Of a stretch of DNA of 64,000 bases, positions 56,550 through 59,500 are shown one piece after another. The notes under the pieces were generated by a model. That model saw nothing but the letters and a program-made list of their open reading frames with translations. It was not told the DNA's origin and did not search any database. Positions within the stretch are counted from its first letter, which is position 1, and each line of letters opens with the position of its first letter. The DNA is from Bugula neritina (taxonomy: Eukaryota; Animalia; Bryozoa). The position numbers and the translations under genes are program-made. Where the stretch lies: the NCBI GenBank assembly GCA_964035545.1, contig OZ037768.1:744001-808000 (forward strand), read 5' to 3'.

Positions 56550-59500
56550 ATGGCTGATTTTCTTATAAGTGGTGGTACGGCCTATGTTCCAGATGATGGG
56601 CAAACCGGGGCCAGTCTATTTGGTGTTGGGGAAGGTTTAACTTACAAGTAAGTTATTGTTAGTGTGTTTGGTAAGTTATTGTTGATATATATGTTATTGT
56701 AGAAGATGTAACTTACATGTAAGTTATTGCTGTGGTACAGCAAAAAGTTTGATCCACATTAGATTACCATAATTATTAATTGCTTTATTTTGTTTTAGTG
56801 ATTTCATTATACTTCCCGGGTACATTGACTTTCCTTCTGGTGATGTCGTAAGTAATAATTTTAACATTCAACACTATTGTAATATTTACATGTGACACCT
56901 GTCACAGGTGCGTGTGACAACTTCTCGCAGGTGCGTGTGACATTGCTTGTTGTTTTCACAGGATCTTTCCTCAGCTCTTACTAAGAAGATTTCCCTGAAG
57001 GCCCCCCTCATTTCCTCTCCCATGGACACAGTCACTGAGGCTAGCATGGCAATAGCCATGGCGGTAAGTTCTCCTATACCGGAGGTGGCTTCACGGCTCA
57101 CCTATATTTGACCTTGAGGTTCTCATATCAGTGAATATTTTGTATAACAAATTTTAACAGCTTTCAATACAAATCAACAATGCTTCTTATAGCTTTTTAT
57201 ATATAGTATATTACTCTCACTTTATACTCGGCCATGACATTCTTTTTAAATATGCTTTGTGAGCCATGGTACTCTGTTCTTTGCTGATGGAGGGACAAAT
57301 CCCTGGAAAAGCTGCTACACACACACTCGCACTCACACACACACTCGCACAAATACATATAACACACTCACACTACTATAATACTAGTAATATATATATT
57401 GCTTTTAGCTACAAGGCGGTGTTGGAGTCATACACCATAACTGTACAATAGAGTTTCAAGCCGAGCAAGTTCGTAGAGTAAAGGTTGGTACACACTTAGC
57501 CTCAATCTGATCAGAACTCATACTAACTTATGTAAACATGTTACACACTTTATTTTGCTTTCAGTTTGTATTTACGTTGTGTATTGAAATATTGATTTGT
57601 CATTTAACGAGGAAGTTTAGAAGCAAATGCAGCAATAATTGCAGATAATGTCATATGTCTGCACTATTACTAATAGTGTCCATATGCCCTGGGGGCTGTC
57701 GGGTGCTGCCGTTCATTGTTCAGCTGAAAGAGAAGTCAGCAGGACATCTAATCTCAGTCTTAGTATAGTCTCTGTTGTATTACATACTACATGTTGTATT
57801 ACATACTAGATGTTGTATTACATACTACGTGTTGTATTACATACTACATGTTGTATTACATACTACATGCTGTATTACATACTCAACTCTCCATGTATAT
57901 GTTCATGGTTATGTTGTATTATGTTGTCTGGTACAATGTATACTGGTACATGCGCGTGTGTACGACCACACGAGCTCATGTATTATGGGATGTACATGTA
58001 GCGGTTCAAGCAAGGCTTCATACTCCACCCCGTATGCATGTCGGCAGACATGACAGTTCAAGATGCTCTCACTCTCAAAGACCAACACGGGTTCTCAGGC
58101 TTTCCTGTCACCACAAATGGTGAGATCGGAGTTAAACTGGTCGGCTTAGCGACCGGACGAGACTTTGACTTCCTCCAGGCCAATCAGTACGACACCGCCA
58201 TAACGGAGGTAGTCAGTCTCCTGAGTGAGGCAGCTCCGAGTGCAGTGGTCGCTTCTGCTTGTCCCTCATCCCTTTAAACCAATGTACTTACTCTGTACCT
58301 AGTTAGTACTTACTCTGTACCTAGTTAGTACTTACTCAGTACCTAGTCAATACTTACTCTGTACTTACTCTGTACCTAGTCAGTACTTACTCTGTACTTA
58401 CTCTGTACCTAGTCTGTACTTACTCTGTACCTAGTCAGTACTTACTCTGTACCTAGTCAGTACTTACTCTGTACCTAGTCAGTACTTACTCTGTACCTAG
58501 TTAGTACTTACTCTGTACCTAGTCAGTACTTACTCTGTACTTACTCAGTACTTACTTTGTACCTAGTTAGTACTTACTCTGTACCTAGTGTGTAGTGTGC
58601 TGTTGGTGAGAGTGTTTAACCAATCACTGCACCGTGTGGCTTGCTTGTCTTTATAGAAGTACGAACAAGGTTTCATAACAGACCCCATCATAATGTCGGT
58701 CGCCTCCACAGTAGGCGACTGCTTTGAGGCTAAGAGAATGCACGGGTTCAGTGGATTCCCTGTGACCTCCAACGGTAGAATAGGTAGTAAGTTGGTGGGC
58801 CTCGTCACCGGTAGAGATATAGATTTTATGACCAAAGATAGACTCAACACCAAAGTACATGAGGTAATCAAGTCACAGGCGGAGTAACTGTTGTTGGCCG
58901 TAGTTGTGTCAGCTGTATGTATGTCAGCAGTATATAGTATCAGCAGTATATAGTGTCAGCAGTGTATAGTGTCAGCAGTGTATAGTGTCAGCAGTATATA
59001 GTGTCAGCAGTGTGTAGTGTCAGCAGTGTATAGTGTCAGCAGTGTATAGTGTCAGCTGTGTATAGTGCTAGCTGTGTATTAGCTGTGTGTTGTGTTTCAC
59101 TTGTCTAGTCACTGTCAGAGCATACCTAAAAGGTTTATAGAAGTTAAAGCTGTGAAGTGTATGTGGGTGGTTGGTGGTTATGAAGTAATACTTCAATGTT
59201 ATTATCTAGTCAACAGTAAAGCAAACTTTTCCATTGCATGTTTAGTCAGATTTATCTAATAGTTGGTGAGATGTGAACTGCTAAGTAGGGTCACTGAGTC
59301 TAGGCCTGTCTAATTAGATTAGGGGGGAAGTTGAACCAACCCCTCTTTGGTAGACTATATACTCTACTTGGGCCTTGGCTAGTTAGTAATAGTTGAACCA
59401 ACTTACCACAGTTGACTGTTTTATCTCTAACCAGCTTACGGCTTGAGGTTTTATAATGCAAATATTTCCCTTGCGTGGTAATAATTCAACACCATAATGA

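What the first reader, a model, noticed from the sequence alone, without database searches (positions are those of the whole stretch)
58002..58863. IMPDH has two equal-length, probably mutually exclusive exons for the allosteric CBS1 motif
Seen: two 207-nt phase-0 exons lie in tandem and align without gaps at 37/69 identical residues. Conserved blocks differ at many synonymous sites (e.g. TCA GGC TTT vs AGT GGA TTC for SGF), and both exons are stop-free with GT-AG signals. Known: the Bateman (CBS) domain binds ATP and GTP and controls feedback inhibition and filament conformation; vertebrates vary this through two genes and terminal splice variants. Exon 5a replaces the conserved [10 protein letters not shown] with [10 protein letters not shown]. 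Inference: an old exon duplication kept by selection lets one gene make two enzymes with the same catalytic barrel but different nucleotide sensing. I do not recall this being described for IMPDH, but I could not search.
Basis: partly seen in the sequence, partly recalled or inferred. Interest (0 to 1): 0.82.

Follow-up and report, generated by a model that had tools for sequence, protein, structure and literature searches.

The report
Two swappable IMPDH regulatory exons
In moss animals (bryozoans), the single gene for the enzyme that sets the supply of guanine nucleotides carries two old, conserved versions of the exon for its regulatory hinge, so one gene probably makes two differently tuned enzymes; I found no paper describing this, but I could not show the second version in RNA.

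Summary
Observation confirmed. The only IMPDH gene found in this Bugula-like bryozoan has two 207-nt, phase-0, AG/GT-bounded copies of exon 5 (human residues 109-177: interdomain hinge plus CBS1), 37/69 identical. Either copy alone gives a 514-aa enzyme. The pair lies in the same order in seven related lineages. 5a and 5b form separate clades, 13 positions are diagnostic, and 5a is under purifying selection (dN/dS 0.06-0.17), so it is not a dead copy. In a relative, transcript-derived proteins join exon 4-5b-6 with one copy. The differences fall in the hinge (E111K, T116L, D117H) and on other CBS1 positions, so a shifted conformational equilibrium is likelier than changed nucleotide specificity. 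A second, non-bryozoan animal duplicates the same exon in reverse order with similar hinge changes. The scan has not reported this IMPDH pair elsewhere but has noted many other swappable exon pairs in this genome. New member of a known kind (PKM, OGDH).

The parts
56550..56647 (+). IMPDH exon 1 (from ATG)
   Evidence: identical peptide in B. neritina locus L016
56799..56847 (+). exon 2
56962..57063 (+). exon 3
57409..57483 (+). exon 4 (ends phase 0; weak donor GTTGGT)
58002..58208 (+). exon 5a, derived copy: hinge + CBS1, [10 protein letters not shown] type, non-consensus donor GTAGTC, pyrimidine-poor acceptor
58237..58249 (+). 5' arm of a predicted RNA stem that closes the 5a-5b intron
   Evidence: pair probabilities 0.85-1.0; coordinates; prediction only
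58280..58590 (.). minisatellite inside the 5a-5b intron (approximate ends), looped out by the predicted stem; much longer in B. neritina (intron 1134 vs 448 nt)
58623..58634 (+). 3' arm of the predicted stem, 23-34 nt upstream of exon 5b
   Evidence: prediction only
58657..58863 (+). exon 5b, ancestral-type copy: hinge + CBS1, [10 protein letters not shown] type
60075..60162 (+). exon 6 (starts phase 0; continues the Bateman domain)
60349..60451 (+). exon 7
60655..60751 (+). exon 8
60957..61143 (+). exon 9 (catalytic-loop motif [10 protein letters not shown])
61318..61461 (+). exon 10
62194..62338 (+). exon 11
62498..62641 (+). exon 12
63142..63225 (+). exon 13
63309..63330 (+). exon 14 to stop codon

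Best explanation
An early bryozoan tandem duplication of IMPDH exon 5 produced a mutually exclusive pair. 5b is the default, ancestral-type exon. 5a is a derived exon with weak splice sites that is switched in under regulation, probably in some tissue or stage. Both give a 514-aa enzyme with the same catalytic barrel and the same nucleotide-contact residues, but with a different hinge (K109R, E111K, T116L/I/V, D117H/Q/S) and a different, more acidic CBS1. This probably shifts the extended/compressed equilibrium and so the GTP feedback set-point or assembly. SHOWN: anatomy, conservation, purifying selection, 4-5b-6 splicing in a relative. INFERRED: 4-5a-6 splicing, strict exclusivity, the splicing mechanism (structured, UG/YGCY-rich intervening intron) and any kinetic difference.
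For: Equal length, phase and boundaries; 514 aa with either copy. Pair in the order 5a,5b in the window, B. neritina L016, L022/L031, the L025 group and L038, L039, L040/L115, and L113; L114 has 5a and the contig then ends. 5a clade 100/98-99, 5b clade 79/91 to 100/97. dN/dS of 5a 0.06-0.17 where dS can be measured, 5b 0.06-0.15. 13 positions with non-overlapping residue sets. P0057 and P0058 join exon 4-5b-6 with a single copy; P0057 is identical to the L038 species. RNA-derived contigs L037/L038 have every other intron spliced but keep the introns flanking 5a. The 5a donor scores -5.7 to -7.6 in all lineages against +4.4 for constitutive donors. The hinge Glu117-Ala123 of Ashbya IMPDH (PMC5454003) maps to exon positions 3-9, where three diagnostic changes lie.
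Against: No spliced product containing 5a was found in any search, and raw reads could not be examined. The frame does not enforce exclusivity: double inclusion is in frame. Human T116M leaves GTP inhibition unchanged (PMC9022972). K at position 111 is common in ordinary eukaryotic IMPDHs (41 of 133), so the hinge changes may be regulatory-neutral.
Confidence: 0.75

Rival explanations
1. The exons are mutually exclusive, but the isoforms differ mainly in non-allosteric properties (partner or nucleic-acid binding on the Bateman surface, stability, localisation), not in GTP feedback.
For: The nucleotide contacts in exon 5 (Ashbya N118, G119, I121, V125, F145, A146, G147, S166, R167, D168; PMC4660370) are matched equally by both window copies. 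Net charge differs consistently: 5a -2 to -6, 5b mostly 0 to +2. T116M affects nucleic-acid binding specificity but not GTP inhibition.
Against: Three diagnostic changes sit in the 7-residue hinge that drives the conformational switch. G113 substitutions there abolish normal GTP regulation in human IMPDH2 (PMC10055058). This rival shares the splicing claim with the best explanation and differs only in the functional outcome.
Confidence: 0.3
2. 5a is a cassette exon included together with 5b, giving a 583-aa enzyme with a tandem extra hinge+CBS1 unit.
For: Double inclusion is in frame. The intervening intron is long enough to splice in most lineages (204-1134 nt; 78 nt in L040), and no long AG-free zone suggests a distant branch point.
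Against: 5a keeps the full set of Bateman and hinge contact residues and the exact length, as expected of a replacement. A third CBS motif would break the two-CBS Bateman module (established knowledge). No protein in any hit list has two spliced copies.
Confidence: 0.08
3. 5a is not translated. It is a decaying pseudo-exon, or a decoy that only delays splicing (intron detention) to tune IMPDH mRNA.
For: Weak splice sites, retained flanking introns in RNA-derived contigs, and no spliced 5a product seen.
Against: Open frame, no indel and dN/dS far below 1 across lineages whose synonymous sites are saturated. 29 of 69 residues are invariant among 8 diverse 5a copies. Selection acts on the amino acids, not the nucleotides.
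Confidence: 0.05
4. Assembly artefact or allelic duplication.
For: The intervening intron holds a minisatellite.
Against: The copies are only 54% identical, and the pair recurs in independent assemblies of several species.
Confidence: 0.005

Closest known systems
Tandem duplicated, mutually exclusive exons in allosteric metabolic enzymes: OGDH exons 4a/4b (PMC7969005); PKM and PFKP (listed in PMC9741552; PKM exon 9/10 allostery from my own knowledge)
   Same: One gene, homologous exon swap in a regulatory region, catalytic core unchanged, old and conserved.
   Different: A different enzyme and domain (hinge + CBS1 of a Bateman domain). OGDH exclusivity is enforced by distant branch points; here the AG-free zone before 5b is only 21-119 nt (42 in the window), so that mechanism is unlikely. 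No function has been measured here.
Vertebrate IMPDH1/IMPDH2 paralogues and retinal IMPDH1(546)/(595) splice variants (PMC9022972, PMC9375230)
   Same: Variants of one catalytic core that tune GTP feedback; the same exon boundaries (109-177) occur in vertebrate genomic fragments.
   Different: Vertebrates use two genes and terminal extensions. Here a single gene swaps an internal hinge/CBS1 exon. The only human IMPDH1 MXE candidate in PMC5740500 is a pair of 64/67-nt exons whose peptides do not resemble the CBS1 exon, and IMPDH is absent from the human tandem-exon tables held for PMC9741552.
RNA-structure-guided MXE choice (ATE1 7a/7b, PMC7797038; Dscam1 docking-selector)
   Same: A predicted stem joins the two ends of the intervening intron in Bugula; a stem at the same offsets with a different sequence is predicted in L031.
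   Different: No conserved docking/selector sequence was found across lineages. The structure signal is modest (i5a folding z lower than other introns, p = 0.025) and absent in two lineages.

Membership tests
Mutually exclusive tandem duplicated exons (MXE) | Adjacent homologous exons of similar length and the same phase with valid splice sites | tested here: met
Mutually exclusive tandem duplicated exons (MXE) | Either exon alone restores the full-length protein | tested here: met
   514 aa with either copy
Mutually exclusive tandem duplicated exons (MXE) | Both exons under purifying selection and conserved across species | tested here: met
Mutually exclusive tandem duplicated exons (MXE) | Transcripts with the downstream exon only (4-5b-6) | tested here: met
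   P0057 and P0058 in a related species; not in this genome's own RNA
Mutually exclusive tandem duplicated exons (MXE) | Transcripts with the upstream exon only (4-5a-6) | tested here: inconclusive
Mutually exclusive tandem duplicated exons (MXE) | No transcripts joining the two exons | tested here: inconclusive
   none seen, but only a handful of transcript-derived products were available
Eukaryotic IMP dehydrogenase | IMPDH barrel with catalytic-loop motif and inserted Bateman domain | tested here: met
   PF00478 hits over the cut-off; PDB hits to human IMPDH1/2
Eukaryotic IMP dehydrogenase | Exon-5 residues of allosteric sites 1, 2 and 3 retained | tested here: met
   Q112, G113, I115, F139, G141, R161, D162 invariant in all 5a and 5b copies aligned (mapping from PMC4660370); S160 is G in both window copies
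Eukaryotic IMP dehydrogenase | GTP feedback inhibition and ATP/GTP-driven octamer switch | not testable with these tools
   needs purified isoforms
Distant-branch-point (OGDH-type) steric MXE | Long AG-exclusion zone and branch point near the upstream donor | tested here: not met
   AG-free zone 42 nt in the window, 21-119 nt in relatives; only L040 (78-nt intron, 63-nt zone) fits
Docking-site/selector RNA-pairing MXE | Conserved complementary intronic elements with covariation | tested here: inconclusive
   high-probability stem in the window, L016 and L031; no shared sequence across lineages; end-to-end duplex z-scores not significant

The most novel reading that the evidence does not exclude
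Two animal lineages independently duplicated the same IMPDH hinge/CBS1 exon and converged on the same hinge changes (E111K, a hydrophobic residue at 116, loss of D117), creating a splice-controlled switch between a GTP-sensitive and a GTP-resistant (or differently assembling) IMPDH from one gene: an invertebrate counterpart of the vertebrate two-gene and retinal-variant system, and a natural test of what the hinge does.
Probability: 0.25. Interest if true: 0.75.

Novelty: new member of a known kind. Interest (0 to 1): 0.52.

Why it matters
IMPDH allostery is studied closely because hinge and Bateman mutations cause retinal and neurodevelopmental disease, and the known ways of tuning it are paralogues, terminal extensions, phosphorylation and filaments. 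An internal exon swap would be a further way. The two isoforms differ only in hinge+CBS1 on an identical background, so they are a ready-made pair for testing which hinge residues set the GTP response. Swappable exons in allosteric enzymes are themselves well known, which limits the surprise.

Tried and rejected
After that I sent no window letters of 56540-63400 to search tools and used relatives' loci instead. 2) The spliced model was searched exon by exon only; the joined step was left out (exons were joined only in local scripts, to check frame and length). 3) P0072, the top profile hit, looked like a spliced 5a product but is a read-through of two genomic exon copies in another animal. 4) Tubulanus RefSeq isoforms X1-X4 and Hydra isoforms all carry one identical or near-identical exon-5 sequence; their genomic DNA could not be fetched, so an unannotated copy is not excluded. 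5) Rbfox-type TGCATG is not enriched. 6) YGCY enrichment in the 5a-5b intron (p 1e-4 against other introns) disappears against dinucleotide shuffles (p 0.38); TGTG stays (p 0.011). Both motifs were chosen after seeing the k-mer table. 7) AU tests cannot decide whether the bryozoan and L116 duplications share an origin (p 0.30-0.60). 8) Accession searches did not name the relatives' species. 9) An apparent exon-2 duplication in L040 is a short tandem repeat over the donor with frameshifted copies. 10) No structure prediction was run: no natural full-length 5a protein was available.

Full report
Observation. The window holds a complete IMPDH gene on the + strand, 56550-63330. Exon 5 occurs twice: 5a at 58002-58208 and 5b at 58657-58863. 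Both are 207 nt, phase 0, bounded by AG and GT, and free of stops. They align without gaps at 37/69 residues and 111/207 nucleotides, and 20 of the 37 identical residues use different codons. Both match human IMPDH residues 109-177. The gene reads 514 aa with either copy, 583 with both and 445 with neither, so the frame does not enforce exclusivity. The 216-Mb genome has only these two copies and one catalytic exon. The strong second PF00478 locus is GMP reductase.

Organism. Exon 5a is 94% identical to its counterpart in Bugula neritina, and dS between them is about 0.17, so this is a close Bugula relative. The public B. neritina annotation calls 5a as a stand-alone 79-aa protein, which means that the pair is mis-modelled there.

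Conservation. The pair lies in the same order (5a, 5b), with the same boundaries, in B. neritina (L016), L022/L031, the L025 group and its relative L038, L039, L040/L115 and L113. L114 has 5a and then ends. These contigs are unnamed. I treat them as bryozoans because they share the exon-4 signature LQGG...VRRVK, which the nemertean and brachiopod sequences lack; that is an inference. In trees, all 5a copies form one clade (100/98-100) and all 5b copies another (79/91 to 100/97), so the duplication predates these lineages, whose synonymous sites are saturated. dN/dS is 0.06-0.17 for 5a and 0.06-0.15 for 5b where dS can be measured, leaving out near-identical haplotype pairs. 5a is therefore a protein-coding exon under selection, which refutes the neutral-copy alternative.

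RNA evidence. The spliced model was searched exon by exon only; the joined step was left out. The evidence is thus indirect and from one relative. P0057 (515 aa) and P0058 join exon 4, 5b and 6 with a single copy, and P0057 is identical to the L038 species. Contigs L037 and L038 have all other introns removed but keep the introns on both sides of 5a, and in L038 5b is already joined to exon 6. This fits slow, regulated splicing around 5a with 5b as the default in those samples. No spliced product with 5a, and none with both exons, appeared in any search.

What differs. Thirteen positions have non-overlapping residues in 9 copies of 5a and 8 of 5b (human numbering): 109, 111, 116, 117, 120, 125, 130, 133, 135, 149, 163, 172, 176. 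Ashbya IMPDH residue 115 corresponds to exon position 1 (assuming that the equal-length match is gap-free). The exon-5 residues that contact GDP in that structure (N118, G119, I121, V125, F145, A146, G147, S166, R167, D168; PMC4660370) map to Q4, G5, I7, V/I11, F31, S32, G33, G52, R53 and D54, which are the same in both window copies apart from V/I. The hinge that drives the ATP/GTP conformational switch, Glu117-Ala123 (PMC5454003), maps to positions 3-9, where 5a has E111K, T116L and D117H. 5a is also more acidic (net -2 to -6 against mostly 0 to +2). In favour of a regulatory effect: human IMPDH2 G113 substitutions in this hinge change conformation and GTP response (PMC10055058). Against: human T116M leaves GTP inhibition normal (PMC9022972), and K111 is common in ordinary eukaryotic IMPDHs (41 of 133).

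How the choice may be made (inferred). The 5a donor is non-consensus in every lineage (score -5.7 to -7.6 against +4.4 for constitutive donors), and the exon-4 and 5b donors are weak in most. The ends of the 5a-5b intron are richer in G+C (0.44-0.65 against 0.37) and in UG and YGCY words than other introns (p about 1e-4). Against dinucleotide shuffles only TGTG stays significant (p 0.011), and these words were picked after seeing the data. In the window a stem with pair probabilities of 0.85-1.0 joins 58237-58249 to 58623-58634, looping out a minisatellite and lying just upstream of the 5b acceptor. It is kept in B. neritina, and L031 has a stem of different sequence at the same offsets. Folding z-scores of this intron are lower than those of other introns (p 0.025), but not in L040 or L113. 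An OGDH-type distant branch point is unlikely (AG-free zone 42 nt). My best guess is a weak 5a activated by UG/YGCY-binding proteins (CELF or Muscleblind type, from my own knowledge), with a stem that hinders 5a-5b joining; I give this about 35%.

A second case. The profile search over 1.84 billion representatives returned no 5a-type sequence outside the bryozoan set; that library collapses relatives at 50% identity, so this is weak evidence of absence. Its top hit led to L116, an unnamed animal with a non-bryozoan IMPDH, which also has two 207-nt phase-0 copies of exon 5: KYEQGFIIDP first and KYKQGFIVSP second, the reverse of the bryozoan order. The second copy shows the same kind of hinge change (E111K, V116, S117). 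In the larger tree both L116 copies fall in one group apart from both bryozoan copies (93/81), which with the reversed order favours an independent duplication. AU tests reject neither history (p 0.30-0.60).

Comparison with what is known. It works like tandem duplicated, mutually exclusive exons in allosteric enzymes such as OGDH 4a/4b (PMC7969005) and PKM. Membership is met for anatomy, conservation and the 5b-only product, and is open for the 5a-only product and for exclusivity. Four literature searches found no description for IMPDH or for bryozoans. A 2022 review of IMPDH allostery describes terminal retinal extensions in its section on splice variants (PMC9375230), and the human MXE catalogue has only an unrelated short IMPDH1 candidate. 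The library lacks most subscription papers. Earlier scan notes list many other swappable exon pairs in this genome (unchecked) and none on this pair elsewhere.

Verdict. Real, old and selected; probably mutually exclusive (about 0.85). A regulatory difference through the hinge is the leading functional reading but is unproven. New member of a known kind; interest 0.52.

Noticed in passing
L116:1589-1795 and 1922-2128: An unnamed non-bryozoan animal (ENA metagenome contig, with several close relatives P0216-P0226) has its own tandem pair of IMPDH exon 5, ordinary copy first and hinge-variant copy second, 126-nt intron; probably an independent duplication.
   Followed up: partly
L037, L038 (RNA-derived contigs of a relative): Only the introns flanking exon 5a are retained; retention of intron 4 gives a 195-aa truncated frame, a possible intron-detention or decay control on IMPDH level.
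   Followed up: partly
L040:4001-4207: This lineage's 5a has E at the position of human S160; S160D/E makes human IMPDH1 resist GTP inhibition (PMC9022972). Its 5a-5b intron is only 78 nt, short enough for steric exclusion. L038 5b has W at the same position.
   Followed up: no
window 62635-62937: A tandem repeat downstream of exon 12 repeats the AG|GTAAGT donor many times; L040 has a similar repeat over its exon-2 donor (L040:2728-2900).
   Followed up: no
L016:7001-7240 (B. neritina): The public annotation calls exon 5a plus intron read-through a separate 79-aa 'IMPDH1' protein, an annotation artefact caused by the duplicated exon.
   Followed up: yes
window 52400-53050, - strand: Exons of a cytochrome b561 gene lie divergently upstream of IMPDH; the same neighbour is present in B. 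neritina (PF03188).
   Followed up: no
window introns 58280-58590, 58920-59090, 59700-60050, 60455-60620, 60780-60940: Most introns carry their own minisatellite, with copy number differing from B. neritina.
   Followed up: no
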